Assembly (NCBI GenBank): GCA_000388065.2
Contig: KB932205.1
Length of the DNA stretch: 40,427 bases
DNA from: Fonticula alba ATCC 38817
Taxonomy: Eukaryota > Protista > Nucleariida
Strand: one strand, 5' to 3'
Shown: positions 14,671-33,805 of the stretch, in pieces
Layout: every line of letters starts with the position of its first letter
Position numbering within the stretch: position 1 is the first letter of the stretch
The notes under the pieces: model-generated
Database searches by the model: none
What the model was told of the DNA's origin: nothing
What the model saw: only the letters and a program-made list of their open reading frames with translations
Program-made: the position numbers and the translations under genes

Positions 14671-17600
14671 ATGTCCTGGCCAACCGGAGCCGGACCCGGG
14701 GCCGGGCGGTTTAGATCCCGGGGCCGCCGGCTCGCCCCTCGGCTGATGCTCCTGCCGGGGCTGATGCTGTTGCCGCTGCTGCTGCTGCTGCTCCTGGCAG
14801 CGGCCACGCCCTCCAGCCAGTCGCTCGGCACGCAGGCCATCTACTTCTACGCGGCCCCCCAGCCGCTGGGCCTGATGCCGGGTTTCCTGGGCTTCGCCAC
14901 CCCGGTCGGCGCACCAACACTTGCCCTCACCATGGGCACCGATCACTATGTGTACGTGTATCAGCAGGCCCCCTTGCTAAGCCTGCCGCATGAATCCCGC
15001 TGGGGGGCCTTCTTTCCCAGTGTCTCGCGCAATGGCATGCTCTGCATGCAGCATTCCTCCGAACCGACGCACGCCCTGGATATGTGGGTCCTCGACTCGT
15101 CGCCCTCCGCCACCCCCATGGTCCTGGAGGTGAGCCCGACGCATGTCAGCCCCTGCGGCGGGGACACCGTCTTCGCCCTGCCGGACCCCGACACCGAACT
15201 CCTGGCTGCCCTGCCAACCAGCTACTTCGACGCATGCATCCTGGCCATGCTCGGGTCGCCGAATGGCCCGCGCACCGCGGCCATCTTGCAGATGACCATG
15301 GGCGAGACGCACCTCCTGGTGCAGGACCTCGACCTGGTCCCGCTGACCGGCAAGGTCCTGGCCGCCAGCGTCTCCCAGCTGACTTTCTACCTGGCCGCCG
15401 AGTCGCGTCTGTTTGTCGTGCGCAGCTCCCCCCACGCGGGCCCCGAGGTCGCGGAGCTCAACGTCCCGGCGGTGCCCGCTCGAGCCATGGTCGCGACCCG
15501 ACTATTGGACGATGGAAATGCCTGCCCGGCCGGGGACCTGATCCTTCTGCTGGACGACCGCCGGCTCCTGGTGTTCTCCTGCCTGGACGACCGTCCTACC
15601 GAGGCCACTTTTAGCGCCACCCTGCCGGCCACGGCCGTCGGCTCCGGGGGCCGCTTTGTCGCCCTCCGTACCGATGCCCTGCTCAACATGCTGTCGTATC
15701 TCCTGTATGTGGACGAGCCCCCGGCCGGGGGCGGTCGCCCGGGAGTCTGGCGCATGGTCCCGACCCCGGACAAGCTCGCTGTCACCTGGCAGCAGGTGGT
15801 GCTCCCGCCCGCGGTGGACCCCACCCGCCTGGAGGCCGTCACCCTGCTCATGGGGCCCGGATCCTACCTGCAGGCTCTTGTCGCCGACGGTGTGGCCCTC
15901 TTCGGGGGAAGCACCCTCGGCTGTTCGACCGACCCCACCATCCAGTGCGACACGCCCTCCGAGAGCACGCTCTCGCCCCTGGGCTGGCAGTGTGTCCCCA
16001 CCCGCGCCGAGTCTCCCTTCGCCGTGGTCGGCCAGCTGTGCGGCGGATGCGCCCAGGGGCACTTTCTGAATCGTCACGGTCGTGCCCGCCCCCCCNNNNN
16101 NNNNNCCCCCCCCGCCCTCCTTCGTCGCCCTCCCTCTCCTTTCAGCCCTTCCTTCTGCGCGTGCCCTTCCGCTGACTGGCATGCCCTTCCGGCCCTTCTC
16201 ATTCGCCTCCCCCTCGTCTTTTTTTCCTTTTGCCCGCCCGGCCTGGCAGTCAATGCTTGCGACCCCTGCCCGCTCGGGGCCCTGGCCTGCAACCCCTCCG
16301 AGCCGCTGGTCTGCCAGGAGCCCCTGCTGCTGACTCCCGGCTCGCCGGGGGCCATGTCCACCTGCACCGCGGCGTGCGCCGAGGGCTTTTCGGAGCTCGC
16401 CGGCGTGTGCCTCCCGCACCTCAACACGCCTGCCACCTCGCACGCCCTCCTGGAGGACTCCTTCTCCGATATGAACCTCGCCCCGGGGCTGGCGGTGACC
16501 ACGGTGGCTGACACGCATTTGGCCCCGGGCGATGGGTCGACCTACTTGATCCCGGGCTCGGTGATAGCCAACCCGCAGTCCCCTCGAAGTGGCGTCCTGC
16601 TGTTGGTGTCCGATGGGTCGGTGGCCATCATGCCGAGCTCGGCCATTGGCACCATGCACGCGCGTAGCCCGCCGGTGGCCAGGCCGCTGTCGGCCGGCTT
16701 GGTCCTGCCCCCGGCCAAGGCCTATGCGGAAGTTGGGCCCCATGTGAAGGGCGACATGGCCAGCCTGGGCTTTGCCCTCTGCCTGGAGGATGGCCAAGTC
16801 CTGACTGGGACATTGACCTGCCCGTTGGACACCTCCGGGCCGGCCCCCTACCAGGGCATTTGTTCGACCGACGGCCCTGTGTTCCTTATTCCCTTTTTCG
16901 GCGGCTGCACCACCCTGCGGCGCATCGGCCAGCATCAGATCCTCGTGCACACCCACGAGCCGGCCCGAATGCTGCTGATCTTCAACGGGAATTGGCACTG
17001 GCAGATGCTGCATCCCTCCATTGAGAGCATGGTCCACCTGCCGGCAATGGATCCGCCCCGGTCGGCCCCGGTCACCGGCAACCCCAGGATCGATGACTGG
17101 TATGTGCTCACCCAGCCGACGGGCCTGGCGACCGGGGTTCCCGAGGGCCTCGTCGATCTGGACCCCCGGTCCCAGGCCCTTGTCGGTGGTTTGTTGGCCG
17201 GCCCGGGCCCGGGCCCGGTGGTCGCCTCGGCGCCGGTGCTCTTGCTCACCTCCGGCGCCATCAGCCCCGGTCGCCCGGCCTGGCAATTGGCCATCACGCA
17301 CTTGACCACGGCCGGGGCCTGGGAGGCTGTCCTGCCGCCGGGGGATGTCATCCCCAGCGGGCGGACGGTCCAGCTGCCGGGGCTTCGCCAGCCGCTGGGG
17401 CTGGTGCCGGGCGGCGCGCCCGGCCCCGGGTCGCCACTGCACTTTCTATCCGTCAGCCTGACCGCCAACGCGGAGTACCCCTCGGCGCTGGTGCTTCTGA
17501 CCGAGCGCCTTGTCGGTGTCTCGCTCTTTTGGTGCCCGGTGTCCAGCGGCCCGTGCGTCCTGCTGCCGGCCTCCTTCACCACCTTCGCCGCGCCGATTCC

Positions 17601-20600
17601 GGACATCGGCCGCCAGGGCGTGGTCCAATGTTCGAGGGCCATTCTCACCCCCGGCCCCGGGCACCTGGTCTCGCTGCTGGCCATGTCCGATGTGGGCAAT
17701 CCGCTGCCGGTGCACCTGGACATCGTGGTCGACTGCCCGGCCGGCACCTTCGGCAAGGGCTGCACCTCCTGCCATGAATCCTGCCTTGTGTGCTCCGGGC
17801 CGCGGGCCGACCAGTGCACCCGCTGCCAGGCCTCGATGCCAGGCAGCCCGGGCACCTGTCTGGAAGCCTGCCCGACGGGCCTCTATCTCGATGCCTTTGG
17901 CGTCTGCCACTGTCACGAAACGTGTCGGAGCTGCGCCCCGGCCCTGCCCACCCCGGGGGCCGCCTACGAGTGCCAAGTATGCCAAGCGACCGACCATGCG
18001 CCGGTCCCCCTGGACCAAGGCCACAGCCCGGGCCAATGCCAGGCCTGTGACGACTCGTGCTCCGTGTGCTCGGTCCCGGCCGATGCCGAGGCATGCACCG
18101 TCTGCCCGCCCGGTCGGTGGGCATTGCTCCATCGCTGCGTGGAGGCCTGCCCGGAGGATCACTGGCCCGACGTGCCGGCCCAAGCCTGCAGGCCCTGCCT
18201 GGGCGACTGCGCCACCTGCCACACCGGCAGCACATGCGCCACCTGTCCGGCTCAGCACTTCCTCGGCGCCGACCTGCGATGCCATGCGTGCGATGGGTCG
18301 TGCGCCGGATGTGCCCAGGCCGGCAGTTGCACCGACTGTCGAGCCGGCCTGGTCTTCCTGTCGGTGGACCCGCAGCAGGCGTCCCTGTGCGGGAGCATCT
18401 GCCCCCCTGGCGAGTATGTCGGGCCCGGCCGATGCGCCACGTGCCACCCCTCCTGCCACTTGTGCGCCGGGTCCGGCACCGCCTGCCAGGTGTGCGCGCC
18501 GGGCTTCCGCTGGGCCGCCCCGGCGGCCCCGGGCCCCCATGGCACCGGGCTGTGCGTGCCCTGCCCGGCCGGGTGCGCCTCCTGCACGGCCACCAGGTGC
18601 CTGTCCTGCGAGGCGGGGCTCCTGCTGGGCCAGGACAACGGCTGCCTGGCGGCCTGCCCGGCCGGCGCCTATGGCACCGATGAATCCCGCCAGCCATGTG
18701 ATGTCACCTGTGGCACCTGCACCGGGGGCTCGCCGGACCAGTGCACCACCTGTGCCGGGGGGCTGGACTTTGTGGACGCCGGCTCCGGCGTCGGGGCCTG
18801 CACCTCCACCTGCCCCGAGGGGCAGTACCGGGAGGAGGGCTCCGGCACGTGTGTCGCCTGCGATGCCGCGTGCGCCGCATGCAACGGCCCCTCGGACACG
18901 GATTGCTGGCGGTGCCATGGGACCGTGCTGCAGGATGGCCAGTGCGTGCAGGAGTGCTCGCCCGGGCATGTGGCCGCCGGCGGCCGGTGCCTTCGGTGCC
19001 ATGTCTCCTGCGACCAGTGCGCCGGGGTCCGGTCCACCGAGTGCCTGCCAGCCTGCCCGGATGACCTGCTGGCCCTGCCAGCCGGGCAGTCGCCCGTGCG
19101 CTGTGTCCCCGCCTGCCCGGCTGGCCACCGGACCACCCCCTCCGGCTGCTCCAAGTGCACGGACCACTGTGCCAGCTGCCCGACGGATGAGTCGGTGTGC
19201 GCCCTGTGCGAGCGCGGCTGGCTCCTGGACAGCCCGGCGTGCGTGGACTCGTGCCCGGCCAACTCCCTACCCATGGGGGGCTTGTGCTCCACCTGCCACG
19301 CGAGCTGCTCCTCCTGCTATGGCCCGGGCCCGGAGCACTGCCTCGCATGCGAGCCGGGGGCCCCGTTGCTGGTGGCCGGCCGGTGCTATGCCGCCTGCCC
19401 GCCAGGGACCTTCCGCAGCGGCTCGGCCTGCCTCCCCTGCCATGGGACCTGCGCCGAGTGTGCCGACGGCCCGGGGCTCGATCAGTGCACGGCCTGCCCG
19501 GCGGGCCGGGCCCTGGTGCAGGCCACCGGCCGCTGTGCGGCCCAGTGCCCGGCCGGGTGGTTTGCCTCCGAAGCCCGGGTGTGCGTCGCGTGCCATCCCA
19601 CCTGCCAAACGTGCGAGCAGGCCGCCGCCTGCCTCACCTGCCGGCCGGGGGACCTCCTCCAGCCGGATGGGGCCTGCAGGGGCGCCTGCCCGGTCGGCTG
19701 GTTTGCGTGCCATGCCTCGGCCATGTGCACCCGCTGCCCGGGTGGCTGTGTCGAGTGCGAGCCGGTCGGCGCCACCTGCACGGCCGCCTGCACCGCCTGC
19801 GAAGAGGGTCGCCATTGGTCCGGTGGTGAATGTGTGACGCGCTGTCCGGCCGGGCAATTTGCGCCGGGCGATTCGCCCGCCTGCGCCCCGTGCCAAGGCC
19901 CCTGCAAGACGTGCGTCGGCCAGGGGACCTTCTGCACGTCATGCCATTCGGGCCTGCTCGAGTACGAGTCCGGCCGGTGTGTCAGCGCCTGCGAGGCGTC
20001 CGGCTTTGCCCCGGCGGCCGGGGTGTGCCTCGCCTGCTTGCCGGGGTGCGACCGTTGCACCGCCGGCCCCGGGCAGCCGGGCTGCGCCACCCGGCCGGAT
20101 GGGACCCTCGACTGCCCGAGCATCGTCGGGTGTTCCCGCTGTGTGGTCGGGCAATTCCTGGCCGACGGGGCCGTGTGCCTGGCCGAATGCCCGGCCGGGT
20201 ACTTCGGCAATTGGGACCCGGAGCATGGGCCAAGTGGCTCCTGCCTGGCGTGCCACCAGCAATGCGCCACCTGCAGCGGCCCCGGCCCGGAGCACTGCGA
20301 TCGCACGCCCGGCCCGGCCGGCTCACGCTTGGGCCTGGCCCTTGGCCTGTCCTTGGGCCTGCTCCTTTTGCTGGTCCTCATCATGCTGCTGGTGCTGTGT
20401 ATTGTCCGCCGCCGGGCCCAGGCCGGCCTCCGGGCCAAGGAGGCCGGCGATGCCGAAGATGCCACCATGCTGAACACCATCCTCGAGATGGCCCTGCCGG
20501 GGGCCATTCTGGTGGACGTCGGCATGGACTTCCGCCCACTGGACGAGAGCCTCGGCTCCGGCGCACAGGCCAGCGTCCACGCGGCCCAGTCGGTGGGCGC

Positions 20601-21411
20601 CGGCATCATGGGGCGCCTGGGCTGCCCGGCCACCGTGGCCATCAAGCAGCTGAACCCCGGCACCATGGACCAGGCCCGGGTGGCCCTGTTCCAGAACGAG
20701 GTGGCGCTGATGTGGCTGCTGCGCGACGCGCCGAACATCGTCCGGCTGTTCGGCTACAGCGACCAGCCGCCGGCCATCGTGATGGAACGCTACCAGACGG
20801 ATCTGGGCACGCTGCTGCACTCGGAGGTCCCGCTGTCGGACCTGCAGCTGGCGACCATCTGCCAGCAGTGGGCCACCGGGCTGGAGGCCATGCATGCCAA
20901 TGGCATTGCCCATGGGGACCTGAAGCCGGCCAATGTGTTTGCCCGACAGGAGGGCCCCGGCCACTGGCATGTGGCCCTCGGCGACCTCGGCACCAGCCGG
21001 AACCTCAACTCCGCCCGGGCGTCGGCCCTGACCAGCGCCTTCCCGGAGCTGAATGCCATGTCCGCGCGGTACGCCGCCCCGGAGCTGATTGATGCCTTCC
21101 AACGGTGTGTCCCCCTGGACCGGGGGCACTGCCTGCCGGCTGACATCTACGCCGCCGGGACCATGCTCAATCAGTGTCTGTCCCGGCGGCCCCCCTGGCA
21201 TGGCATGGGCCTGGAGCAGGTCTTGGCCGCGGTGAGGGGGGGCCAGCGCCCCGACACCGCCGGCCTCCCGGCAAGCGGGCCCTTCGCCAATGCCGGGGGG
21301 CTCATCTCGGTTGCCTGGCGGGCGGATCCCCTGCTGCGCCCCGGTGCCGGGACCTTCCGCCAGCAATGCGCCACATTCGTCGTTGCTGCTGGCGGCCTTG
21401 ACCTGCGGTAA
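14671..21411 (+). CDS. Gene C: giant receptor Ser/Thr kinase paralog; join(14671..~16078,16250..21411), about 2189 aa
   Basis: ATG 14671 MSWPTG... leads into the signal LMLLPGLMLLPLLLLLLLAAA. Domains A and B, the Cys-rich stalk and a TM at 20329..20406 follow. Kinase motifs are GSGAQASV, VAIK, HGDLKPAN (20911..20934), DLG and YAAPE, with TAA at 21409-21411. The ORF-track start at 13024 is upstream stop-free GC-rich sequence. Confidence 0.88.
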   Translation: MSWPTGAGPGAGRFRSRGRRLAPRLMLLPGLMLLPLLLLLLLAAATPSSQSLGTQAIYFYAAPQPLGLMPGFLGFATPVGAPTLALTMGTDHYVYVYQQAPLLSLPHESRWGAFFPSVSRNGMLCMQHSSEPTHALDMWVLDSSPSATPMVLEVSPTHVSPCGGDTVFALPDPDTELLAALPTSYFDACILAMLGSPNGPRTAAILQMTMGETHLLVQDLDLVPLTGKVLAASVSQLTFYLAAESRLFVVRSSPHAGPEVAELNVPAVPARAMVATRLLDDGNACPAGDLILLLDDRRLLVFSCLDDRPTEATFSATLPATAVGSGGRFVALRTDALLNMLSYLLYVDEPPAGGGRPGVWRMVPTPDKLAVTWQQVVLPPAVDPTRLEAVTLLMGPGSYLQALVADGVALFGGSTLGCSTDPTIQCDTPSESTLSPLGWQCVPTRAESPFAVVGQLCGGCAQGHFLNRHGRARPPXXXXPPALLRRPPSPFSPSFCACPSADWHALPALLIRLPLVFFSFCPPGLAVNACDPCPLGALACNPSEPLVCQEPLLLTPGSPGAMSTCTAACAEGFSELAGVCLPHLNTPATSHALLEDSFSDMNLAPGLAVTTVADTHLAPGDGSTYLIPGSVIANPQSPRSGVLLLVSDGSVAIMPSSAIGTMHARSPPVARPLSAGLVLPPAKAYAEVGPHVKGDMASLGFALCLEDGQVLTGTLTCPLDTSGPAPYQGICSTDGPVFLIPFFGGCTTLRRIGQHQILVHTHEPARMLLIFNGNWHWQMLHPSIESMVHLPAMDPPRSAPVTGNPRIDDWYVLTQPTGLATGVPEGLVDLDPRSQALVGGLLAGPGPGPVVASAPVLLLTSGAISPGRPAWQLAITHLTTAGAWEAVLPPGDVIPSGRTVQLPGLRQPLGLVPGGAPGPGSPLHFLSVSLTANAEYPSALVLLTERLVGVSLFWCPVSSGPCVLLPASFTTFAAPIPDIGRQGVVQCSRAILTPGPGHLVSLLAMSDVGNPLPVHLDIVVDCPAGTFGKGCTSCHESCLVCSGPRADQCTRCQASMPGSPGTCLEACPTGLYLDAFGVCHCHETCRSCAPALPTPGAAYECQVCQATDHAPVPLDQGHSPGQCQACDDSCSVCSVPADAEACTVCPPGRWALLHRCVEACPEDHWPDVPAQACRPCLGDCATCHTGSTCATCPAQHFLGADLRCHACDGSCAGCAQAGSCTDCRAGLVFLSVDPQQASLCGSICPPGEYVGPGRCATCHPSCHLCAGSGTACQVCAPGFRWAAPAAPGPHGTGLCVPCPAGCASCTATRCLSCEAGLLLGQDNGCLAACPAGAYGTDESRQPCDVTCGTCTGGSPDQCTTCAGGLDFVDAGSGVGACTSTCPEGQYREEGSGTCVACDAACAACNGPSDTDCWRCHGTVLQDGQCVQECSPGHVAAGGRCLRCHVSCDQCAGVRSTECLPACPDDLLALPAGQSPVRCVPACPAGHRTTPSGCSKCTDHCASCPTDESVCALCERGWLLDSPACVDSCPANSLPMGGLCSTCHASCSSCYGPGPEHCLACEPGAPLLVAGRCYAACPPGTFRSGSACLPCHGTCAECADGPGLDQCTACPAGRALVQATGRCAAQCPAGWFASEARVCVACHPTCQTCEQAAACLTCRPGDLLQPDGACRGACPVGWFACHASAMCTRCPGGCVECEPVGATCTAACTACEEGRHWSGGECVTRCPAGQFAPGDSPACAPCQGPCKTCVGQGTFCTSCHSGLLEYESGRCVSACEASGFAPAAGVCLACLPGCDRCTAGPGQPGCATRPDGTLDCPSIVGCSRCVVGQFLADGAVCLAECPAGYFGNWDPEHGPSGSCLACHQQCATCSGPGPEHCDRTPGPAGSRLGLALGLSLGLLLLLVLIMLLVLCIVRRRAQAGLRAKEAGDAEDATMLNTILEMALPGAILVDVGMDFRPLDESLGSGAQASVHAAQSVGAGIMGRLGCPATVAIKQLNPGTMDQARVALFQNEVALMWLLRDAPNIVRLFGYSDQPPAIVMERYQTDLGTLLHSEVPLSDLQLATICQQWATGLEAMHANGIAHGDLKPANVFARQEGPGHWHVALGDLGTSRNLNSARASALTSAFPELNAMSARYAAPELIDAFQRCVPLDRGHCLPADIYAAGTMLNQCLSRRPPWHGMGLEQVLAAVRGGQRPDTAGLPASGPFANAGGLISVAWRADPLLRPGAGTFRQQCATFVVAAGGLDLR
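16079..16249 (+). other. Gene C intron 1 (phase 1; donor uncertain among 16073, 16079 and 16082; contains N gap 16096..16105)
   Basis: It has a pyrimidine-rich tract, a CTGAC branch-like site and acceptor CTGGCAG|TCAATGCTTGC. The position matches the paralogs. Confidence 0.7.
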
Positions 21412-22947: not shown

Positions 22948-24491
22948 ATGCACCACCAACAGGGCGGGGCCGCCGGCCAGCCGCCCCCATCACAACCCGC
23001 ACGGCCCATCCTCTCGCTCATGCTGTGGCTCCTGCTGCTGCTGCTCGGCTCCGGCGCCCTGGCCATGGACGTGGACCAGCAGGTCGGCGGGGAGCTGCTG
23101 CTGATTGCTTCGGGCACGCCCTTCGGCTGCACTGACATGCTCGGCCGGCTCTTCGCCGGGGATGATGCGGTTTGCTACCGGGTTTTCAACCGGTCCACCT
23201 GGCTCTCCTACCGGCAGCCAAGCAGCCGGCCAACCGGCTGGGACTTCCGAAGGGACAGCTTCTTCACAAATGACCCCTCGCTCAGCGGCCCCCTGGTCGG
23301 GATGCCACAGGCGCTGGACTTCGGCCCATTGGGCTTGCCATCGACCCGCACCGACCCGCTGTTCCTCTGGCAGAGCGGCTCCCAAGTGGGCCTGTCCGTG
23401 GCGGGGCAGAGCCACACCCACGCCCTGCCGGCCGGCCAGCCGGCCGCCCTGCTGGCCGGCCATGCCAATGGCCCGGACGAGGTGACTGCCCTGGTCCTGG
23501 TCGAGGGGGCCGACGCCTCCCTGAACAGGGCCCACACCCTGCGCTGGCGCAATCAGGCCTGGCTGGCGACCGATGCGCAGGTCCCCCATCCTCGGGCCCC
23601 GGGGGCCACCGGCCTGCCGGGGAACTTCTTCCTGGCCACGGCCGACGGGTGGGCCTGGATCCGCCCCGGCAGCCCGACACTCAGCTTCCCCCTCGGCCGG
23701 CCGGTGGTGGCCCTGGCGGCCACGCGCTTCCTCACCCCCCACCTCCAGGCCATGGATCTGGTGGTCACCACGGCCGATCGCCTGTATGTCTACCTGGGGC
23801 TGGACCCCGGCACCGGCACATGGGCCGAGCTGCTGGAGGCTGGCCAGCTGCCGGAAGAGCGCCAGGCACTGACCACGCGGCTGGTGCCCCCGGTGCAGGA
23901 CGCCACCCTCCCCACGAGGTTCCTGCTGCTGGTGTCTGGGACCCGGCAAATGTGGCGCCTGGTCCGCCTTTCGACCGGGGGACATGGCGGCGATGCCGGC
24001 CCGGCCGGCGGCCAGCTTCTCTGGCAGGCCATCCGCCTGCCGGCCACCTTCGCCACCTGGCCGGATGTGGTCCGGATGGCACCGGTGAACCTCGGCCCGG
24101 CGCGGCCCGAATACTGGGTCCTCTTCCAGGACAACCAGGCCTACCACCTGGCCGATGACATGGGCTGTGACTCTGACCCCTCGATCAGGTGCGATCGGCT
24201 TGCCGCGACCTGGGCATGTGCCCCCGGGCGCCTGGAGGCCCCGCATCTGGTCCATGGCCAGCTGTGCGGCGCCTGCGGGGATGGCTTCTTCCGCTCGCCT
24301 GCGCCCCGTGGCTCCTGTGCGTTTGGCAGCACGCCCGTCTTCGGCCGGGGCCGGGCCCGGAGGGGGGGGGGGGGCGATCCCCGGGACCGGTGCCTCGACC
24401 ACCGGCGAGGCACCTCCACCCGTCGATGTCCTGCCGCTGCACGCAGTGCCGGTATTGTCCCGGGGGGGGGGGGCGGGGGGTGGCGCTGGCG

Positions 24492-24534
<43 letters not shown>

Positions 24535-24701
24535 CGGGGGGAGGGGGGGGGGGGGTGGGGGCGGGGGGTGCGGCGGGGGGGGGGGGGGATCTAAGCCGCC
24601 GGCCCTGGCCCCTTGGAGCGTTGCACCTGTCGCCCTTCTGCCGCGGCCAAAATGCTCACCCACCTGCTCGCGGCACTGCCACTCCCACGCTGAAATCCAA
24701 T

Positions 24702-24735
<34 letters not shown>

Positions 24736-27700
24736 CACATATGTGCATTTGATTGGGCTTTTTTTCTCGCACTTGCATGCGCTCATGACCTCGGACGCGC
24801 CTCCCCAACCGCCGCCCATCCCGTCCCCNNNNNNNNNNNNNNNNNNNNNNNNNNNNNNNNNNNNNNNNNNNNNNNNNNNCCCCCCCCCCCGCCGCCCCGG
24901 GCCTGAATACTACTGGCACATGGACACATGCGCCCACGCGCACGGCCCCTCCATCTCGTCGGCTGGGCGCGGAAAAAAAATCCCCCCATCCCTGAACACA
25001 GACGAGTGCCGGCCCTGCCTGGTCGCTGGCTGCCAGGTGTGCTCGGATGCCGGCGAATCCTGCTCCACCTGCCAGGGCGACCTGCTGCTGGTGCGCGGCC
25101 CGCCCGGCCAGCCGGACAGCTGCGTCGAGACGTGCCCCGGCGGGCTGACGGCCCTCGGCCGGGTGTGCGGGCCGTCCCTCCATCCCCAGCCCGACCTGCA
25201 TGTGGCGACCTTGGACAACCGCATCGCCGGGGGGACCGGTGTGTCCACGTTTTGCGCCTCCCGTACATATCTCAAGGCCGGCCGGCTCCATGTGTCCAAT
25301 GCCTCGCTGGCGGCCCGGGAACCGGAGTCCCTCCTGGCCAGCCTGGCCAGCAGCTCCCTCGGGATGCTGGATGTCCAGCAAATGCGCCAGGATCCCCTGG
25401 CCCCGGTGGTGGTGACCCCGGTCCAGGGCATGCCGCTGGTGCCCGGCGTGGAGCACATCCTCGAGATGGGCCCCTTCATCAGCGACCGCAGGGTGAGCCT
25501 GCTTTTGCTGGTCGACTGCGGCCCGGGCTGCATGTCGGTCATCCGCCTGGCGTGCACGCTGCCGGGCACGGCCCCGGCCGACGAGTGCCAGCTCCAGGCC
25601 CGGGCGTGGGCGCTGGACCGCCACCTCCTGCAGCGCCAGCCCGTGCAGAAGCTCACCCCGTCGGTGGTGTCCTTTGGCCACCATGTGGCCGAGTTCCAGG
25701 CCGATGGGTCGCTGATTTTGACCGGGCCCGGTGCCCCGGCCGCGCCAAGCTCCCTGGCCATGGGCTTCCACCGGGACGTGGCAACTGGCCGGCCGGGGCA
25801 AATGCTTTACACCCATGCAAAGTCCAGCACACAGGTGCACGCCATCTCCTGGGACATTCGTCGCCGGATGGGCCTCACGACGCAGGCCCTGGCGGCGGCG
25901 TGGGCCACGCCCGACCCGGCCCCCCAGGCAGCACTCCTTCGGCCTGAAGCCCCGGCGAGCCCATGTGGCCGGGCCACCGCCGCCGCCACCGCTGGCCCGG
26001 GCCAGGGCCAGCCCCCGGGCCAGGCCCAGCCGGCCATCGGCACCGCCAGCAGCATGGTCAGCGACTTGTGGGTCCTTGTCAGCCTGGCGACCCGGCCGTC
26101 GGGCACCCCGCCGGCCTCTCGCTCGGAGGACATCGTCCACACCGGCCTCCTGACATCCGGCGGCCAGGTGCACTGGGGTGCTGTGCATCGGCCGCTCGGG
26201 GCCCATGCGCAAGGCCGCGTCAATGACATCCCCGGCGGCTGGGAGGCGCTGGCCCCGGTGGCCGGCATCACCGACCGCAGCCCCTTCTTCGCGACCGGGG
26301 TGGCCCTGCGCGGGTCCGGCGAATTCCCCAGCGCCCTGGTCATGGTCAGCCAGATGCACCTGGGCGTGGTGCTGCTCCACTGCCCGGCCGGGGTGGCCAC
26401 ATGCCGCCTCGGGCCGCGCCGAGTGGTGGCACTTCCCCCGAGCCAGCGCCTTCTGCCCGCCTCGGGTGGGGCCATTGCCACGCCGCTGCCCGGGGCCTGG
26501 CCGCCGGTCGGCGAGCATGCCCCCGGCCCGGCGGCCGCCCTGCTCCTTTCCCCGGTGGCGCCATACACGCAGCCGGTCCTGCTGGTGCGGGTGTCGGTGG
26601 CCGATTGCCCGGCCCGCACCTTCGGCCCGGGCTGCCAGCCATGCGACGCCTCCTGCCAAGGCTGCACCGGCCCGGGCCCCGGCGAGTGCACCGGGCCCCG
26701 GTGCGCCTTCTTCCGGCCCTCGCAGCCGGATGCCTGCCTGGATGCCTGCCCGGCCGGGCTGCACCCGGATGCCGAGGGGGCCTGCGGCTGCCACGCCGAC
26801 TGCGCGGCCTGCCACCTGTCGCCCGGCCGGGGGCAGTACATTTGCACGGCCTGCCGGCCGGGCATGGCCTTGGACCCGGCGGCCCAGCCGCCGGACCGGT
26901 GCCGCCCCTGCCATGCGTCCTGCTCCGAGTGCCATGCCCCGGCAAGCGCCACCGCATGCCAAGCCTGCCCGAGCGGCGGCCTCCTCGGCCCGGCCGGCGT
27001 GTGTGCCGCGGCCTGCCCGGCCGGCACCTGGCCCGACCATGCCGCCGGCACATGTGTCCCCTGCCCGGGCAATTGCGCCGCCTGCACCGGGCCGGACTTC
27101 TGCACCGCCTGCCAGCCCTCCCCGCTGCCGGACCCGGCGTCCGGCTGGTGCGTGGCCTGCTTCGAGCAGTGCGCCCAATGCCAGGGCAGCCTGGACGCGT
27201 GCCTCGCCTGCCGGCCGGGCTTCCGCTGGGCGGCCGGCGCCCCGCCCGCCGGGCCCGACCAGACGGCCCCCTGCGTGCCCTGCCCCGAGGGCTGTGCCGA
27301 GTGCGCGGACGATGGGGGCTGCCTGTCCTGCCGGCCGGGCTTCCTGATCGGCATGGACCCGGGCACGTGCGTCAGCCGGTGCCCGGACGGCACCGCGGCC
27401 CACTCGCCATCGCGGGCCTGCCGGCCCTGCCACCAGGACTGCGGCACATGCTTCCAACCGGGCGACGGGAAGGCCTGCAACGCCTGTGCCCCGGGGAAGT
27501 TCCTCCAGCCGACCAGCTTCAGCTGCCTGGACACCTGCCCGCAAAGGTACTACCCCGGCAGCGGGGCCTGCATTCGCTGCGGCCCCCTTTGCCAGGCCTG
27601 CTCCGGCCCGGGCAAGTGCGACCGGTGCGAGCCCGGGCGCTTTGACCCCGGCGACGGGTCCTGCGCCCTGTGCCCGGACTCCTGTGCCACCTGCTCCGGG

Positions 27701-30700
27701 CCCGCGGCCTGCGACGCCTGCCAGGGGGGCCTGGTGTTCCTGTCGCCGGACCCGGCCGTCGGGTCGCTGTGTGGCGATGCCTGCCCGGCCGGGAGCTACC
27801 CCGGCCCCGACCGGTGCCTGGCCTGTGGCACGGCCTGCGCCCGATGCGCCGGCGATGCGCACCTGTGCGAGGCCTGCGCGCCGGGGCACCGGTGGGCCGG
27901 CCACCCGCCGGCCGCCGGGTCCGGCCTCACCGGCTCCTGTGTGCCCTGCCCGGCGCACTGCGACGTGTGCACCGCCGATGACGAGTGCCTCGCGTGCGAT
28001 GCCGGCTTCTTCCGCCGGGCCCAGAACGGCGCCTGCGTGGCTGCCTGCCCGCCGGGGGAGTACCCGGAGCCGGGCTCGGCCGTGTGCCGCGCGTGCGACG
28101 CCACCTGCGGCCGCTGTGCCGGGCCGGCCGGCGACCAGTGCACCGGCTGTGCCCCGGGGAGCGTCCTCTCGCGCGAGGGCCGATGCATCGAAAGCTGCCC
28201 GGCCGGCCAGTACCCGGGCCAGGCGGCCGGCGGTGCTGCCGGCCCGGCCGCCCCGCCGGAGCTCCAATGCCTCGCCTGCTCCCCGGCTTGCGACAGGTGC
28301 GATGGCCCGGGCGAGGGGGCCTGCACCGCGTGCCCGGCCCCCCGGCTGCTGGAGGCCGGCCGCTGCGTCGACCAGTGCGGCCCGGGCCACTTTGCATGCG
28401 CCCCGGCGGGCCGGTGCGCCCCCTGCCCGGATGGCTGTGCCGCATGCCAGCCGGCGGAACAGGCGCCGACCGCCTGCCGGGCCACCTGCACCGGGTGCCA
28501 TGCCGGCATGGTGCTTTCCCCTGGCACCGGCCGGTGCGGGGCGTTCTGCCCCCCGGGGGAGTTCCTTCCCCGGGCGGATGCCCTCGAGTGTGCCCCCTGC
28601 GGGCCGAGCTGCGCGGCCTGCCACGGCCAGGCGGACCGGTGCACCGTGTGCGCCGACGCGGCTGCCTGGCTTCGCCCCGACACCGGCCACTGCCTGGAGT
28701 CCTGCCCCGAGGCCGGCTTTGCCGTGTCCCCCGCCGAGAGCGTGTGCCTGGCATGTGCATCGAACTGCGACCGGTGCACGGCCCCCCCGGACACCCGCGC
28801 ATGCACCCTCGCGCCGGATGGGCGCCTCGATTGCCCGGCCATGTCGGCGTGCGACCGCTGTGCCCCGGGCTACCTCCTTCTGGCCGGGGGCTCCTGCGTG
28901 GCCGACTGCCCGGCCGGGCACTTCCCCCGGTGGGATGCCTCGCCGGGCGTGTGTGCGCCCTGCCATCCGAAGTGCGCCGGCGGGTGCACCGGCCCGGAGG
29001 AGTCACACTGCGACCGGCCTGCCGGCCATTCGCCAGCCAGCCAGCGTCTGGGTATGTAGCCTCCTGCCCGCGGCTTCCTGCCAGATGCCCCCCCGCCGCA
29101 CATGCCCCGGCAGCGGTCGCCGGTCTCGCCGTCTCGCCCTGCTCTCTGACCATGTCCCGCTGACCCCGGAACGCCTGCCCCNNNNNNNNNNNNNNNNNNN
29201 NNNNNNNNNNNNNNNNNNNNNNNNNNNNNNNNNNNNNNNNNNNNNNNNNNNNNNNNNNNNNNNNNNNNNNNNNNNNNNNNNNNNNNNNNNNNNNNNNNNN
29301 NNNNNNNNNNNNNNNNNNNNNNNNNNNNNNNNNNNNNNNNNNNNNNNNNNNNNNNNNNNNNNNNNNNNNNNNNNNNNNNNNNNNNNNNNNNNNNNNNNNN
29401 NNNNNNNNNNNNNNNNNNNNNNNNNNNNNNNNNNNNNNNNNNNNNNNNNNNNNNNNNNNNNNNNNNNNNNNNNNNNNNNNNNNNNNNNNNNNNNNNNNNN
29501 NNNNNNNNNNNNNNNNNNNNNNNNNNNNNNNNNNNNNNNNCCCCCCCCCCCCCCCCCCCGCCCTCCGCCGAACGCGCGGCCCAGCCATCGGCCTGGGCAT
29601 CGGCTTCGGGCTGCTGTTCCTGCTGATGTTCCTGGCCCTGATCCTGTTTTTGATGCTGCGCTTGCGTCGGGACCAGGGCCTCAAGGAATTGGTACGGGCC
29701 GGCCTCTGGCGCTGCCACGCCCCGTTGGATCTGCTTGCGCCCCACTGACACGCCCCCCGACGCCGCCGTGACACCCTGCAGGTGGATGAGCTGGATGAGG
29801 GTGCGTGGCTGGACACCGCCGCCGTCGACACACACCCACGCGCACACATCGCACAGGACATCGCCCTAACTGACGACCCCCTTGGCGGCACAGTGTCCCC
29901 GGATCTGGGCCCGATCAGCGGTTCGTTGACCGGCCTTCTGCCTGACCATGCCCCAGCCCCCGCACTGACCACGGCTGCCCCTCGCCGGCGCTCGCCAGAC
30001 CCCACGCCCCCCGGGACGCTGCGGGTGGACCTGGCCGCGGACTTCACCCCGCTGCGGACGCCCCTCGGCACCGGCCGCCACTCGACCATCTTCGCGGCGC
30101 GTGCCGTCGGTGGGGGCACCACCACGCGCCTCGGCTGCCCGGACATCGTGGCCATCAAGCTCATGAAGGGTTCGTGCTTGGCCCACCGGCCGCCATCACC
30201 AGCACCACCACCACCATCACCACCCCTTGGCCCCCGACTAAGAGGCACGCTTGCNNNNNNNNNNNNNNNNNNNNNNNNNNNNNNNNNNNNNNNNNNNNNN
30301 NNNNNNNNNNNNNNNNNNNNNNNNNNNNNNNNNNNNNNNNNNNNNNNNNNNNNNNNNNNNNNNNNNNNNNNNNNNCCCCCCCCGCGGCACCTTGCCCTCC
30401 TGCCAGCCGACGCCCCGGATGCCGATGTGGCGCGGCGCCTGCAAAATGAAATCGCCCTCATGTGGTGCGTACCTGCTGCCGGCCGGCACCCCATGCGCCT
30501 GGCCACTTTGTGGCCGGGGTTGCTTTTTTTTCCGCCCGCCCGCCCCCGGGCTCACTCCCGCCCCCGGGGGCATCGGTCGGTCGCGCTGACATGGCTGCCC
30601 GCCTGCTTGCCCCTTGACCCAGGCTGCTCCGCGATCAGGACAACATCGTGCGGATGTACGGCTACAGCGACAGCCCGCCGGCCCTGGTCATGCAGCAATA

Positions 30701-31436
30701 CCAGACGGACCTGGGGAGGCTCGTCCACTCGCGGGCCGATGTGCCCCTGGGCGACATGCTGCACATTTGCCACCAGTGGGCCGCCGGGCTGGACGCCATG
30801 CACAATGCCGGGGTGGCGCACTGCCACTTCGGGCCGGACAAGATCCTGGTGGCCCCCGCGGGCCCGGGGTCCTGGCTGGTGGCGGTCGGCGACCTGGCCG
30901 CATCGAGGAACCTCCGCCACCCGCCGGCCGAGGTGGCCCCCCCCGCGCCGGGCCCCCGGCGGGCGGCCTACACCGCGCCGGAGGTGCTGCTTGCCGCCGA
31001 GCGCCAGCGCCCGCTCAAAGCCGCCTTCCACCTGCCGGCCGATGTCTTTGCCGCGGCCGTGGTCCTATGGGAGTGCCTGACCCGCGCCATCCCCTGGGAG
31101 GGTAAGCAACCATCCGCCCTTTGCCTCTTCCTCCCCCCGCCGCACCCTGTCCAGGCACACAGCGCACTCCCCCCCCTCGCCCGGCCCTTACTGACTGCCC
31201 TGCTTGCGCACGCCCGCCCGCCAGGCTCCGACGCGGACACCATCAAGGCGGACGTGCGGTCTGGCCGGCGGCCGGACATGGCCGCGGCCGTGGCGCCCCT
31301 TCGCCAGCAGGCCCCGACCTTCGTCCAAGCCACCACCAACCTCCTCAACCAGGCATGGGACGAGGACCCCCTCGACCGGCCGTCAGCCATGGCCATCCAC
31401 CAGCTGTGCGCCGCTATCCTGGCCGCCCTGCCGTGA
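22948..31436 (+). CDS. Gene D: receptor pseudokinase paralog; join(22948..24316,25002..29051,29585..29691,29782..30169,30407..30464,30623..31101,31225..31436) = 2220 aa
   Basis: The signal is ILSLMLWLLLLLLGSGALA. All six introns have GT..AG ends with matching phases, and the total is 6663 nt. The spliced junctions reproduce paralog sequence: KLMKADAPDADVARRLQNEIALMW-LLRDQDNIVRMYGYS versus KKMRTEAMQPVHFLMFQNEVALMWLLRDAPNIVRLFGYS. The catalytic loop reads HCHFGPDK. Confidence 0.85.
24317..25001 (+). other. Gene D intron 1 (phase 1), containing poly-G 24493..24534, (CA)n 24702..24729 and N gap 24829..24879
   Basis: Donor GTGCGT, acceptor AACACAG. Splicing gives GFFRSPAPRGSYECRPC. Confidence 0.8.
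29052..29584 (+). other. Gene D intron 2 (phase 1) immediately before the TM exon; contains N gap 29182..29540
   Basis: Donor GTATGT, acceptor GGCCCAG. Splicing gives SQRLAIGLGIGFGLL. Confidence 0.8.
29585..29691 (+). other. Gene D transmembrane exon (AIGLGIGFGLLFLLMFLALILFLMLRLRRDQGLKEL), absent from the ORF track
   Basis: Hydrophobic helix followed by RLRR. LKEL matches gene B ALKEL. Confidence 0.88.
29692..29781 (+). other. Gene D intron 3 (phase 0)
   Basis: Donor GTACGG, CTGAC branch-like site, acceptor CCTGCAG. It contains an in-frame TGA. Confidence 0.82.
30170..30406 (+). other. Gene D intron 4 (phase 1; N gap 30255..30375)
   Basis: Donor GTTCGT, acceptor CTGCCAG. Splicing gives the same Lys-to-alphaC-Glu spacing as gene B. 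Confidence 0.85.
30465..30622 (+). other. Gene D intron 5 (phase 2, splits the Trp codon of ALMW-LLRD)
   Basis: Donor GTGCGT, acceptor GACCCAG. Confidence 0.88.
31102..31224 (+). other. Gene D intron 6 (phase 1, 123 nt, stop-free)
   Basis: Donor GTAAGC, acceptor CCGCCAG. It lies at the same PWx position as the gene A and gene E introns. Confidence 0.85.
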
Positions 31437-33805
31437 CCATGGCCGCCCCCATGCGCCGGGCGTCTCCTCGTGTCTATGCGATAAATCTTCACATCCCTCC
31501 GTCGTGTGGCCCCTCCGGGCCGGGGCGGGGGGGTCTTCTTTTTTCTTTTTTCTTTTTCATGGGCGCCCGCTTCTCCACATCGGCACAGGGCGCCCTGCCG
31601 GGCACGCGACCCAGCGGTGAATCGCCGCGGCGGCGCCCCGTGCGGGGCTGGCTGCCCTGCTCTGGAAGGGGACCACAGGGGGGGGGGGGGGGGGGGGGCG
31701 CACAGGATGCTCGGCCCTGCCCGCTGGCAAAGGCCACGCCCCGGGCGGCGCGCGCCGCTCCCGCACGCGAAGAGCACCCTCCCCGGGCCGGAGACCCGTC
31801 GCCGGGGCAGGCACCCGGGCAGGATCCAGGCACTGAGGGACCCCCAGCAGGGCATACTCGGGACTGTGCCGCCCTCGGCCCCCCGGGGTCGAACGAGCAG
31901 CACCGCCCACACCGGCCCCGGGAGAGCCGCCGCCGGATGCGCCCCGGGCCCCGGGGGCACGGATCGGGCCCCGGAGGCGGGCATGGTAGGCGTGTAATTT
32001 TTACTTTCGATCGCGCACAGCCACCCGCCCAACACGGGCAATCCGGAAGGGGGCCGAGCAAGCGGCCCGGGCGCAGGCCAAGGACGGGGAGGAACCAGCG
32101 CGCGCACGGCTGGCGGCAACACATGATGGAGCTCCTTCGCCCGGGCCGGCTCCCGACCTCCCGCGGAGCTTTGCGCCGGTTGGCCGCCGGACCGGAAAGT
32201 GCCCCGGGCGAGTGGGCGCCCCATGAAGCGAGGCCCCCCGGCAAGGTGGCCCAGTGCCTGGGCCAGGGCCGACGCGGCGAAGCGGCACGCAGGCTGGCTG
32301 GCCATCCCGCCGCCGGGCGCACAACACCGCCGCCTGCCCGTGGTGGCTACCCGGGGCCTGGGTAGCCCCCACGCACGGGCCGGTCTACTGGCGGGGATTT
32401 TGGCAGAACCCCGCCAGAATGCAAGTGCTGAAGGCCGTTAACTGGCCTGGGCGGGACTTAACCCAGGCCCGTGCCGCCCTCGGCCAGCGCCGGGCGCTGG
32501 CGCGCGAGCTTGGGGGTCCTCATGCCAAATATTTTGATTTAAAAACCCCATCCTCATTGGGATGCACTTTCCCAACCCGTCGATTTGATCCGTGATCCGG
32601 GGCCGGCGGGCCCGCAGGATCGGCCGGCCCATCGGCGCTCGTTGCATGCGCCTGCTCGGCTTGCTGCGGCTGGGGCGGCCCGCAGGCGCGCCGAGCGCCC
32701 GGAGCACCCCCACGACCGGGCCCGTTGTGGCGGACCACATTCCCAGTCTGGCGCACCTCTCCGGTCGTCCGCCGGCCGCTCCGTCCCTGCCTTGGTGCTC
32801 TTCTCGCCCCCGCTCGCCCCCTCCCTCATCTCCCCAGCTGCTGCCCACAGGGGCCGCTTCGTGCCCCCGGAGGAGGTGCTCCCACCTCCGGGACGGCACT
32901 TTCGCGGTTCGGGACCGCGTGTTCCTTTGTGTGCGGCCGCGGAGCTGGCTTTTTTCTTTTTTTTTTTCTCTCGGCCCACCCTCGTCCTGCAACGGGCTCA
33001 GCCCCCCCGATGGCGGCGCGCCGCCCCTCTCTCCCGGGCCCCAACACCGCCGGGCTCGCGCCACAAGGGACCGGCCGCTCGCTCCCGCGGGCGTCGGGAT
33101 CGCACCGACCAACTGCCGACGAATGCACGGGCCCGCCCCGGGAATGCCCCGCCGGCGCCGGGAAAAGATCCCGCCCCCTCCGAGCGCAGGGGCTTCCTGC
33201 TTGCATCCACGACCCAAGGACCCCGGGGCGGGAGCTTGTGGGATGCTCTTGCTGGCCGGCTCCTTGCGCGACACGCACCCGGCAGATGGCGACCGCGGGC
33301 CGTGGAACCGGGAGGAATGGCGGTCCCGCCGGGATCCCCATGCGGGGCTTGCTGGCCCGCCGCGCCAGACGCCCGGCCCTGGGGCGCCTGCTGGGGGGCC
33401 CCGGCGTGCCGAGCAGGGGTGGCGCGCATGCCCCGCTCTGTCACGCCCCTCCCGGGGGCAGGGCGCCCGGCGCGCCGGCGCGGCCGAGCTGCCCGTGGTC
33501 TGGCGCCCCGGCTTCGTGGGGGACCCGCGCGCGCGCGAAGACCACCCTTCACGCCGGCCGCGCCCTTGACCGGGGGTGTGTGCCCTGCGGTGGGTGGTCG
33601 TTCCCTTCCCGCTTGGCCCCTCATTCCCTCGGCCTCTTCAGGGGCCGGATGATTGCCGGCCCGCTGCACGCCGGGCCCGGGGGCATCCCACCTCAAAGCA
33701 TGCCCCGCGCCGGCCTCTTGCCTCCCCCCCNNNNNNNNNNNNNNNNNNNNNNNNNNNNNNNNNNNCCCCCCCGGACCCCTCGCACACCCCCCTCTTTCGC
33801 GCTTC

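What the first reader, a model, noticed from the sequence alone, without database searches (positions are those of the whole stretch)
30819..30899. Intact, spliceable receptor pseudokinase embedded among active paralogs
The catalytic loop HCDLKPGN has become HCHFGPDK (30819..30842), so the catalytic Asp, Lys and Asn are all lost. DLG has become DLA (30891..30899) and the Gly loop reads GTGRHSTI. VAIK, the alphaC Glu, YTAPE, DVF and WECL are retained, and the 2220-codon model has no stop or frameshift. Multiple changes focused on catalytic residues with the fold preserved argue for a functional pseudokinase rather than decay. Established: dead receptor kinases act as co-receptors, allosteric activators or decoys (HER3, plant BIR2 and ZED1). 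Inference: this is a sensor/helper or decoy pairing within the cluster.
Basis: partly seen in the sequence, partly recalled or inferred. Interest (0 to 1): 0.76.

Follow-up and report, generated by a model that had tools for sequence, protein, structure and literature searches.

The report
Expressed receptor pseudokinase in Fonticula alba
One gene in a tandem row of giant surface-receptor kinases of the amoeba Fonticula alba has lost the residues needed for catalysis, yet it is transcribed, correctly spliced and kept intact by selection, so it is a working "dead" receptor of an already familiar kind.

Summary
At 30819-30842 the catalytic loop reads HCHFGPDK, against HCDLKP(G/A)N in the paralogs. 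At 30891-30899 DLG has become DLA. VAIK Lys, the alphaC Glu, the DFG Asp, APE and the C-lobe motifs are kept.

The window is Fonticula alba. Gene D is the annotated 2163-aa "TKL protein kinase".

Spliced RNA contigs from four runs (two samples, one study) match D with no mismatch across seven GT..AG introns, including the dead motifs.

- **Selection on the kinase region:** a codon branch model gives omega 0.20-0.21 on the D branch (background 0.12). Neutrality is rejected at p about 2e-8.
- **Where the changes fall:** the kinase domain evolves about four times faster than in paralogs. Losses are concentrated in catalytic and regulatory segments (21/37 against 6/64 conserved columns).
- **Ectodomain:** the head domains have the shortest branch of five paralogs, and the Cys-rich stalk is intact.
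- **Uniqueness:** D is the only one of about 50 paralog kinase domains examined that has lost Asp, Lys and Asn. A second, milder case lies in another cluster. No ortholog exists in public data.

Verdict: a selectively maintained receptor pseudokinase, a new member of a known kind. The proposed partner or decoy role is untested. This scan had already noted two unrelated expressed pseudokinases in this genome.

The parts
22948..24316 (+). Gene D exon 1: start codon, signal-peptide-like N-terminus, first head domain
   Evidence: The annotated protein P0001 maps exactly here. The donor GTGCGT is at 24317. This exon was not covered by the stretch on which reads were laid.
24317..25001 (+). Intron 1 (685 nt, GT..AG), contains N run 24829-24879
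25002..29051 (+). Exon 2: rest of head 1, head 2, and the Cys-rich furin-like repeat stalk
   Evidence: RNA contigs cover 28000-29050 with 0 mismatches and run on upstream of the laid stretch. The stalk has 125 Cys and 46 CxxC in 800 aa, as in paralogs.
29585..29691 (+). Exon 3: transmembrane helix and RLRRD stop-transfer
   Evidence: RNA joint 29050/29584, GT..AG. The TM segment lies at 29584-29658.
29782..29800 (+). Exon 4: 19-nt micro-exon (VDELDE)
   Evidence: The 16 letters found between the joint sides in all four runs match 29784-29799. Paralogs of the clade have the same 6-aa exon.
29894..29920 (+).
29999..30169 (+). Exon 6: Gly loop (30067-30090) and VAIK (30148-30159)
30407..30464 (+). 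Exon 7: alphaC helix with retained Glu (QNEI, 30442-30453)
   Evidence: The preceding intron holds N run 30255-30375.
30623..31101 (+). Exon 8: C-lobe core with the degenerate catalytic loop and activation segment
   Evidence: RNA contigs cover it with 0 mismatches in 4 runs. Pfam Pkinase E = 1.1e-10 on this exon alone.
30819..30842 (+). Catalytic loop HCHFGPDK (family: HCDLKPxN)
30891..30899 (+). DLA in place of DLG (DFG equivalent; Asp kept)
31225..31497 (+). Exon 9: end of the kinase domain, stop codon at 31434-31436, 3' UTR to at least 31497
   Evidence: The RNA contigs end at 31493-31497. Searches give the coding end.

Best explanation
Gene D is the annotated 2163-aa 'TKL protein kinase' of Fonticula alba. 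It is a single-pass surface receptor with a signal peptide, two head domains, a disulfide-rich furin-like stalk and one transmembrane helix.

Its cytoplasmic kinase domain has lost phosphotransfer chemistry. The HxD Asp is now His, the catalytic-loop Lys is Gly and the Asn is Lys. The Gly of DLG is Ala, the activation segment has been rewritten and the juxtamembrane motif replaced.

Shown here: the gene is transcribed, correctly spliced, open throughout and under purifying selection. Its ectodomain evolves no faster than those of paralogs with intact motifs.

Inferred: it still senses something outside the cell with its own head domains and signals without catalysis. The kinase-shaped domain would serve as a docking or allosteric module for a catalytically competent family member, as KSR does for RAF and HER3 does for EGFR/HER2. 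It keeps VAIK Lys, the alphaC Glu and the DFG Asp, so it may still bind nucleotide. It also keeps the family-invariant Arg that aligns with the Arg of BRAF's RKTR dimer-interface motif.

Whether it activates, scaffolds or damps its partner is not resolved. I favour partner-dependent positive signalling or scaffolding. The confidence given is for the core claim, a selectively maintained and expressed receptor pseudokinase that acts without catalysis. The specific activator or scaffold role is perhaps 0.4.
For: **Identity.** One search gives a 100% match to the F. alba TKL protein kinase, 2163 aa. map its exons.

**Expression and splicing.** One search shows contigs of 3.3-3.7 kb in four runs (two samples, one study). 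They join seven GT..AG introns with 0 mismatches, including 30622-31100, which holds the dead motifs. Searches give the splice sites and reading phases.

**Dead by the sequence definition.** The HRD Asp is absent. The definition is from PMC13519141.

**Selection.**
- Omega on the D branch is 0.20-0.21, background 0.12, and omega = 1 is rejected at p = 1.5e-8 to 2.3e-8 on two topologies. The scaffold-only partition gives omega 0.25, with omega = 1 rejected at p = 2e-4.
- A neutral 2157-codon frame would gain about 159 stop codons per unit of neutral distance. P(no stop) falls below 0.05 from d = 0.019. The catalytic loop alone shows 10 changes in 30 nt.
- GC3 is 0.895, against 0.725 in D's own introns.

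**Domain-specific rate shift.** The kinase end branch is 1.09-1.22 against a median of 0.26-0.31. The head-domain end branch is 0.69, the shortest of five. Stalk Cys and CxxC counts equal those of paralogs.

**Placement of losses.** 21/37 against 6/64 conserved columns, Fisher p = 7e-7.

**Fold.** AlphaFold2 gives pLDDT 92.6 and pTM 0.91, with best structural matches FES, BRAF and FGFR. The best PDB sequence matches are the MLKL pseudokinase and BRAF.

**Invariant Arg.** R1937 is invariant in 28 aligned domains and aligns to the Arg of BRAF's ...KTRH.
Against: - No ortholog exists in any collection searched. Conservation of the dead state across species therefore cannot be shown.
- Omega is an average over the whole D branch, which includes time before inactivation. 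A simple two-phase mix allows up to about 10% of the branch to have been neutral.
- dS on the branch is 1.0-1.4, close to saturation. The active-site partition and the head-domain codon fits were saturated and unusable as omega estimates.
- Omega on D is not significantly above background (p = 0.08-0.10), so 'relaxed' rests more on the protein branch length than on omega.
- The functional segments for the Fisher test were partly chosen after seeing the losses.
- The AlphaFold2 confidence leans on the alignment of paralogs.
- The RNA comes from one study and, presumably, the same strain as the genome.
- Transcription does not prove that protein is made.
- No partner, ligand or nucleotide binding was tested.
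- D's neighbours belong to a different kinase clade, so nothing links it to them functionally.
Confidence: 0.75

Rival explanations
1. D is a decoy or ligand sink, that is a negative regulator. It is still a maintained pseudokinase, but it works by titrating a ligand or an active partner away from productive signalling, not by promoting it. This is a variant of the best explanation, not an exclusion of it.
For: - The ectodomain is fully conserved in architecture and rate.
- The kinase has lost both its catalytic and its regulatory segments, including the conserved activation-loop Ser/Thr positions and the juxtamembrane motif.
- Dead receptors of this kind are known (reviewed in PMC13519141).
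Against: A pure ligand sink would not need a folded kinase scaffold. Yet scaffold columns are kept 58/64 and scaffold omega is 0.25, with omega = 1 rejected.
Confidence: 0.2
2. D is an atypical enzyme. The domain still catalyses phosphotransfer or another nucleotide-dependent reaction with non-canonical residues, for example His at the Asp position or Lys replacing the Mg-binding Asn.
For: - VAIK Lys, the alphaC Glu and the DFG Asp are retained, so ATP binding is plausible.
- Precedents for residual or altered activity in sequence-defined pseudokinases (WNK, SelO, Bud32, HER3) are reviewed in PMC13519141.
Against: - Three catalytic-loop residues are lost together, along with the DFG Gly and the whole activation segment.
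- No relative shares this loop, so there is no sign of a conserved alternative active site.
Confidence: 0.1
3. D is a recently disabled gene on its way to decay: a transcribed unitary pseudogene whose frame has simply not been hit yet.
For: - D is one of only two degenerate members seen in a family of about 50, and it has no ortholog to show long-term retention.
- It has the longest kinase branch in the family.
- Pseudogenes can be transcribed.
Against: - Omega = 1 is rejected.
- There are at least 27 changes at family-conserved columns and 10 nucleotide changes in the catalytic loop. These imply far more elapsed divergence than the d of about 0.02 that an unselected 2157-codon frame survives.
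- All eight introns keep GT..AG, and the seven introns covered by RNA are spliced precisely, including those flanking a 19-nt micro-exon.
- The head domains have the shortest branch of five paralogs, and the stalk's Cys pattern is untouched.
- GC3 is 0.895 against 0.725 in introns.
Confidence: 0.07

Closest known systems
KSR1/2 with RAF (TKL-group pseudokinase pairing with an active paralog)
   Same: - D's family is TKL-like: its best PDB sequence matches are the MLKL pseudokinase and BRAF, and BRAF and CRAF are among the best fold matches.
- D is a degenerate paralog that sits alongside paralogs with intact motifs.
- The Arg that aligns with the last Arg of BRAF's RKTR motif is invariant in the family and kept in D.
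   Different: - KSR is cytoplasmic and keeps HRD and DFG but alters VAIK (PMC13519141). D is a transmembrane receptor that keeps VAIK and loses the HRD Asp.
- No dimer was modelled or tested.
- Identity to BRAF is only about 21%.
HER3/ErbB3 and the other human receptor tyrosine pseudokinases
   Same: - Single-pass receptor with a Cys-rich furin-like ectodomain element.
- Intact ectodomain, loss of the catalytic Asp, retained beta3 Lys.
- Active paralogs are available as partners (PMC13519141; the abstract of PMC13259870).
   Different: - D is not a tyrosine kinase: Fonticula has no TKs (PMC4342544).
- HER3 has HRN and lacks the alphaC Glu, whereas D has HCH and keeps the Glu.
- D's origin is independent and lineage-specific.
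- D's ectodomain heads have no Pfam match.
Plant receptor-like pseudokinases (e.g. BIR2; from my own knowledge)
   Same: A dead member arises inside a large, lineage-specific, tandemly expanded receptor Ser/Thr (TKL/IRAK-like) kinase family and acts as a co-receptor or regulator.
   Different: - Different ectodomains (LRR against furin-like stalk plus unknown heads).
- Unrelated expansion in a different eukaryotic supergroup.
- Not tested here.
MLKL pseudokinase
   Same: It is the best-scoring solved structure by sequence (6vbz_A, E = 1.6e-8). It is TKL-like with a degenerate catalytic loop.
   Different: MLKL is a cytoplasmic executioner with a four-helix bundle. It has no receptor architecture. 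The similarity is at the kinase-fold level only.

Membership tests
Eukaryotic protein kinase superfamily (Pfam PF00069 / PF07714) | Profile match above the curated gathering score | tested here: met
   P0001 scores Pkinase 69.1 bits (cut-off 31.7) and PK_Tyr_Ser-Thr 66.2 bits (cut-off 23.1). Exon 8 alone scores 41.8 bits.
Eukaryotic protein kinase superfamily (Pfam PF00069 / PF07714) | Bilobal kinase fold | tested here: met
   AlphaFold2 gives pLDDT 92.6 and pTM 0.91. Foldseek matches FES, BRAF and FGFR at TM 0.74-0.79. This is a prediction and it leans on the paralog alignment.
Pseudokinase (sequence-based definition, PMC13519141) | Absence of at least one of VAIK Lys, HRD Asp, DFG Asp | tested here: met
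   The HRD Asp is replaced by His (HCH). VAIK Lys and the DFG Asp are present.
Pseudokinase (biochemical sense) | No phosphotransfer activity; nucleotide-binding class | not testable with these tools
   Needs recombinant protein.
Fonticula alba furin-repeat TKL receptor kinase family | Shared architecture (heads, Cys-rich stalk, TM, C-terminal kinase) and kinase-domain clade membership | tested here: met
   Searches show homology in every domain, 31-51% identity. The exon pattern 36/6/9/57/20 aa is shared with P0004; P0014, P0017 and P0002 match it to within a residue or two, allowing for unmapped split codons.
Fonticula alba furin-repeat TKL receptor kinase family | Family-conserved juxtamembrane motif (..T.LNT..E..LPG) and activation-segment motifs | tested here: not met
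   D has lost T, N, T, E and L of the juxtamembrane motif and 8 conserved activation-segment positions. It is a divergent member by descent.
Non-functional pseudogene | Stop codons or frameshifts, broken splice sites | tested here: not met
   The frame is open through 2163 codons, and all eight introns are GT..AG.
Non-functional pseudogene | Neutral evolution (omega about 1) | tested here: not met
   Omega on the D branch is 0.20-0.21, and omega = 1 is rejected at p about 2e-8. The caveat is that this averages over the whole branch and dS is near saturation.
Non-functional pseudogene | No transcription | tested here: not met
   Spliced contigs are present in four runs.
HER3/KSR-type allosteric partner | Physical heterodimer with, and activation of, an active paralog | not testable with these tools
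   There is only a lead: the invariant Arg aligned with BRAF's RKTR Arg.
Metazoan-type receptor tyrosine kinase | Membership of the TK group | tested here: inconclusive
   The sources name it TKL. PDB sequence hits mix TKL (BRAF, MLKL, RIPK4, TAK1) with FGFR3. A published survey found no TK in Fonticula (PMC4342544). No group-level kinase classification was run here.

The most novel reading that the evidence does not exclude
The two clusters examined each hold one degenerate member, and in each case it is drawn from the other kinase clade. In the window, clade-II D sits among the clade-III genes at 11083, 20911 and 40012. On scaffold KB932210.1, clade-III P0050 (HGDLSPAN, DLG changed to HLG) sits next to clade-II P0014 and P0030.

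If this is not coincidence, Fonticula, a relative of fungi with no tyrosine kinases, has independently evolved obligate dead/live receptor pairs. That would be a HER3-like or KSR-like allosteric system, possibly used in its aggregative multicellular life.
Probability: 0.12. Interest if true: 0.7.

Novelty: new member of a known kind. Interest (0 to 1): 0.36.

Why it matters
Pseudokinases make up about a tenth of kinomes and receptor pseudokinases are well known, so a dead member in a family of about 50 receptors is expected, not surprising.

The modest value lies in the setting. Fonticula alba is an aggregatively multicellular relative of fungi with no tyrosine kinases. Its large family of giant TKL receptor kinases did not turn up in my literature searches. 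This gene is a clean, expression-backed case of a receptor whose sensing half is conserved while its signalling half has been repurposed. It gives a concrete entry point (D plus P0014 or its neighbours) for asking how this receptor family signals. It also shows that allosteric or scaffold use of kinase domains arose independently outside animals and plants.

Tried and rejected
1. **Ortholog search.** I looked for an ortholog carrying the same dead loop. Two word searches and the exhaustive representative search found only F. alba paralogs. The best kinase match is 51% (P0014) and the best head match 39-41%. The cross-species conservation test was therefore impossible.
2. **Omega for the active-site and regulatory partition alone.** dS ran to 16.9, saturated and partly an alignment problem in the rewritten activation segment, so I discarded it.
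3. **Codon model on the head domains.** dS hit the bounds (39-54), so omega values are meaningless. I kept only the ranking of dN and the protein branch lengths.
4. **Compensated frameshift.** I asked whether the odd activation segment comes from a compensated frameshift of the ancestral sequence. The other two frames show nothing like the family motif, so I rejected this.
5. **D and P0050 as one old dead lineage.** They fall in different clades, so I rejected this.
6. **First mapping attempts.** Mapping proteins to DNA with 100%-identity tblastn HSPs and with a greedy mapper lacking a start anchor both failed. They were replaced.
7. **Literature.** No paper holds both 'Fonticula alba' and 'pseudokinase'. 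Searches for Fonticula with receptor kinase, TKL or kinases returned nothing on this family.
8. **Expression ranking.** Ranking D against its neighbours was not attempted, because contig depth cannot rank genes.

Full report
**What is in the sequence**

Window 30819-30842 translates to HCHFGPDK, and 30891-30899 is the DLA of ...VAVGDLA. The same gene carries:
- GTGRHSTI at 30067-30090
- VAIK at 30148-30159
- the alphaC QNEI at 30442-30453
- YTAPE at 30969-30983
- ADVF at 31038-31049
- LWECL at 31065-31079

Three other kinase domains lie on the same strand in the window, near 11083, 20911 and 40012. They read HCDLKPGN, HGDLKPAN and HCDLKPGN, each followed by DLG. The tail of a fifth kinase sits at 3-218.

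**Identity and gene model**

The window is Fonticula alba. D is identical to the annotated 'TKL protein kinase' of 2163 aa (P0001) on scaffold KB932205.1 of GCA_000388065.2. The exact mapping gives nine exons:
- 22948-24316
- 25002-29051
- 29585-29691
- 29782-29800
- 29894-29920
- 29999-30169
- 30407-30464
- 30623-31101
- 31225 to the stop codon at 31434-31436

The extra codons are two short introns (93 and 78 nt) that happen to be in frame and open. The three runs of N inside D all fall in introns.

The protein has a signal-peptide-like N-terminus and two head domains without a Pfam match. It then has a stalk of about 800 aa of furin-like or VSP-like Cys repeats, one transmembrane helix followed by RLRRD, and the kinase domain.

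**Expression**

Four public runs of 2012 (two samples, one study; their type is not on record) hold the stretch. Their contigs of 3.3-3.7 kb lie on D with no mismatch. They skip 29051-29583, 30169-30405, 30464-30621 and 31101-31223 with GT..AG ends, and they join the 19-nt micro-exon and the 27-nt exon as well.

Spliced contigs can only come from RNA. D is therefore transcribed and spliced exactly as annotated, and the bases of the dead motifs are confirmed in cDNA. The contigs end at 31493-31497.

Exons were searched by reference. After that I used the database's own protein record P0001. In scripts, codons were taken exon by exon with split codons left out.

**The family, and how unusual D is**

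Word searches and the exhaustive profile-free search found only F. alba paralogs at E < 1e-30 (47 representatives). The next hits are distant kinases, among them a Pandoravirus protein at 29%. No ortholog exists in these collections.

About 50 family kinase domains were aligned to a family HMM. Every one except D has H-x-D, the catalytic-loop Asn and the DFG-position Gly. One other member, P0050, is milder: it reads HGDLSPAN, and DLG has become HLG. P0050 lies directly upstream of P0014, D's closest kinase relative, in another tandem cluster on KB932210.1. D and P0050 fall in different clades, so they are independent degenerations.

D's kinase groups with the clade that holds P0014, P0030, P0004, P0017, P0002 and others. 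Its window neighbours belong to another clade. Its head domains are closest to P0002 and P0039 on other scaffolds.

**Decay or maintained?**

*Codon model.* I wrote a GY94-type branch model with F3x4 frequencies and applied it to 301 codons of D, six clade members and two window neighbours.
- Omega is 0.20-0.21 on the D branch and 0.12 elsewhere.
- Omega = 1 is rejected at p = 1.5e-8 and 2.3e-8 on two topologies.
- Omega equal to background is not rejected (p = 0.08-0.10).
- Control tips range from 0.06 to 0.23.
- The scaffold partition alone gives omega 0.25, with omega = 1 rejected at p = 2e-4.

*Domain contrast.* At the protein level, D's kinase end branch is 1.09-1.22 against a median of 0.26-0.31. 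In the head domains D has the shortest end branch of five paralogs, 0.69 against 0.77-1.18. The stalk has 125 Cys and 46 CxxC in 800 residues, the same as paralogs with intact motifs.

*Where the losses fall.* Of 101 columns conserved in at least 23 of 24 paralogs, D has changed 27, the most in the family; the next highest counts are 15 and 13. Of these losses, 21 fall in the 37 conserved columns of the juxtamembrane motif, Gly loop, catalytic loop and activation segment. Only 6 fall in the 64 scaffold columns (odds ratio 12.7, p = 7e-7). The segment boundaries were partly set after seeing the data.

*Internal clock.* The catalytic loop differs from the clade's codons by 10 nucleotide changes in 30 nt, all amino-acid changing. 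If these accumulated once the first hit had removed constraint, the elapsed neutral distance is of the order of 0.1-0.4 per site. An unselected frame of D's codons would gain about 159 stops per unit distance. P(no stop) is 0.04 at d = 0.02 and 6e-7 at d = 0.09, before indels and splice sites are counted. So the rest of the gene has been kept by selection while the loop degenerated. The alternative, that the loop changes were themselves selected, also implies function.

*Codon bias.* GC3 is 0.895, against 0.725 in D's own introns.

**Fold**

AlphaFold2 on an alignment of 28 family domains gives pLDDT 92.6 and pTM 0.91. The dips are at the beta3-alphaC loop and the activation segment. The best structural matches are FES, BRAF, FGFR and RET. 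By sequence the best solved relatives are the MLKL pseudokinase and BRAF.

**Mechanism**

*Shown:* D is an expressed, intact, constrained receptor with a catalytically degenerate kinase domain.

*Inferred from established knowledge of pseudokinases* (PMC13519141): it acts without catalysis. The kinase scaffold is still constrained, VAIK Lys, the alphaC Glu and the DFG Asp are kept, and the Arg aligned with the Arg of BRAF's RKTR motif is invariant (the role of that BRAF residue is from my own knowledge). For these reasons I favour a partner-dependent role as allosteric activator or scaffold for an active family member. A decoy or damping role is the main variant.

The loss of the conserved juxtamembrane motif and of the activation-loop Ser/Thr positions fits a domain that is no longer regulated as an enzyme. 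Nothing here identifies the partner, and the neighbours are not favoured by phylogeny.

**Comparison with what is known, and novelty**

D meets the sequence definition of a pseudokinase because it lacks the HRD Asp. It is a member by descent of a lineage-specific TKL-like receptor family. It works like HER3, KSR or plant receptor pseudokinases only by analogy. The gene is already annotated, though as a kinase.

My searches found no paper linking Fonticula to pseudokinases or describing this receptor family. A published survey found no tyrosine kinases in Fonticula (PMC4342544). Earlier notes of this scan report two unrelated expressed pseudokinases in the same genome (STRAD-like and MAPK-derived) and the tandem receptor array itself. 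I did not test those.

**Verdict**

D is a new member of a known kind. It is well supported as a maintained pseudokinase, with modest interest.

Noticed in passing
L001:2859-9221 (KB932210.1), protein P0050: A second degenerate family member. Its catalytic loop reads HGDLSPAN (Lys changed to Ser), DLG has become HLG (the Mg-binding Asp is lost) and the Gly loop is altered. It has lost 11 of 98 conserved columns. It lies directly upstream of P0014 and P0030, D's closest kinase relatives, but belongs to the kinase clade of D's window neighbours.
   Followed up: partly
window 29585-30464; L002, L003, L006, L001: The juxtamembrane and N-lobe exon pattern (about 36, 6, 9, 57 and 20 aa, including a 19-nt micro-exon) is shared by D and its clade (P0004, P0017, P0002, P0014). 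The window neighbours at 10630-11580 and 20458-21405 have intronless kinase regions.
   Followed up: partly
window 29801-29893 and 29921-29998: Two short introns (93 and 78 nt) are in frame and free of stops. An intron-retaining mRNA would therefore still encode a full-length protein with 57 extra juxtamembrane residues. Only the spliced form was seen in the contigs.
   Followed up: partly
window 30622-31100 region, P0001 residue 1937: The Arg at the end of alphaC (LLRD) is invariant in all 28 aligned family domains. In the HMMER alignment it pairs with the Arg of BRAF's ...KTRH motif. This is a lead for RAF-like side-to-side dimerisation in the whole family.
   Followed up: no
window 22948-29051 against P0002 (L006) and P0039 (L007): The tandem cluster is phylogenetically mixed. 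D's head domains and kinase are closest to genes on other scaffolds, not to its neighbours. This suggests old duplications with relocation, not recent local duplication.
   Followed up: partly
P0035 (Pandoravirus belohorizontensis kinase): The only non-Fonticula protein in the word search is a Pandoravirus Ser/Thr kinase of 1725 aa (29% identity, E = 8.6e-13).
   Followed up: no
window 2811-2862, 9080-9089, 16096-16105, 24829-24879, 29182-29540, 30255-30375, 33731-33765: There are seven runs of N in the window. The three inside gene D fall in introns. (CA)n-type microsatellites that read as THTHTH occur in introns and intergenic DNA, for example near 24700 and 21540.
   Followed up: partly
window 3-218: The C-terminal end of a further family kinase (58% identical to the gene ending at 21411) lies at the very start of the window. 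The array therefore continues upstream.
   Followed up: no
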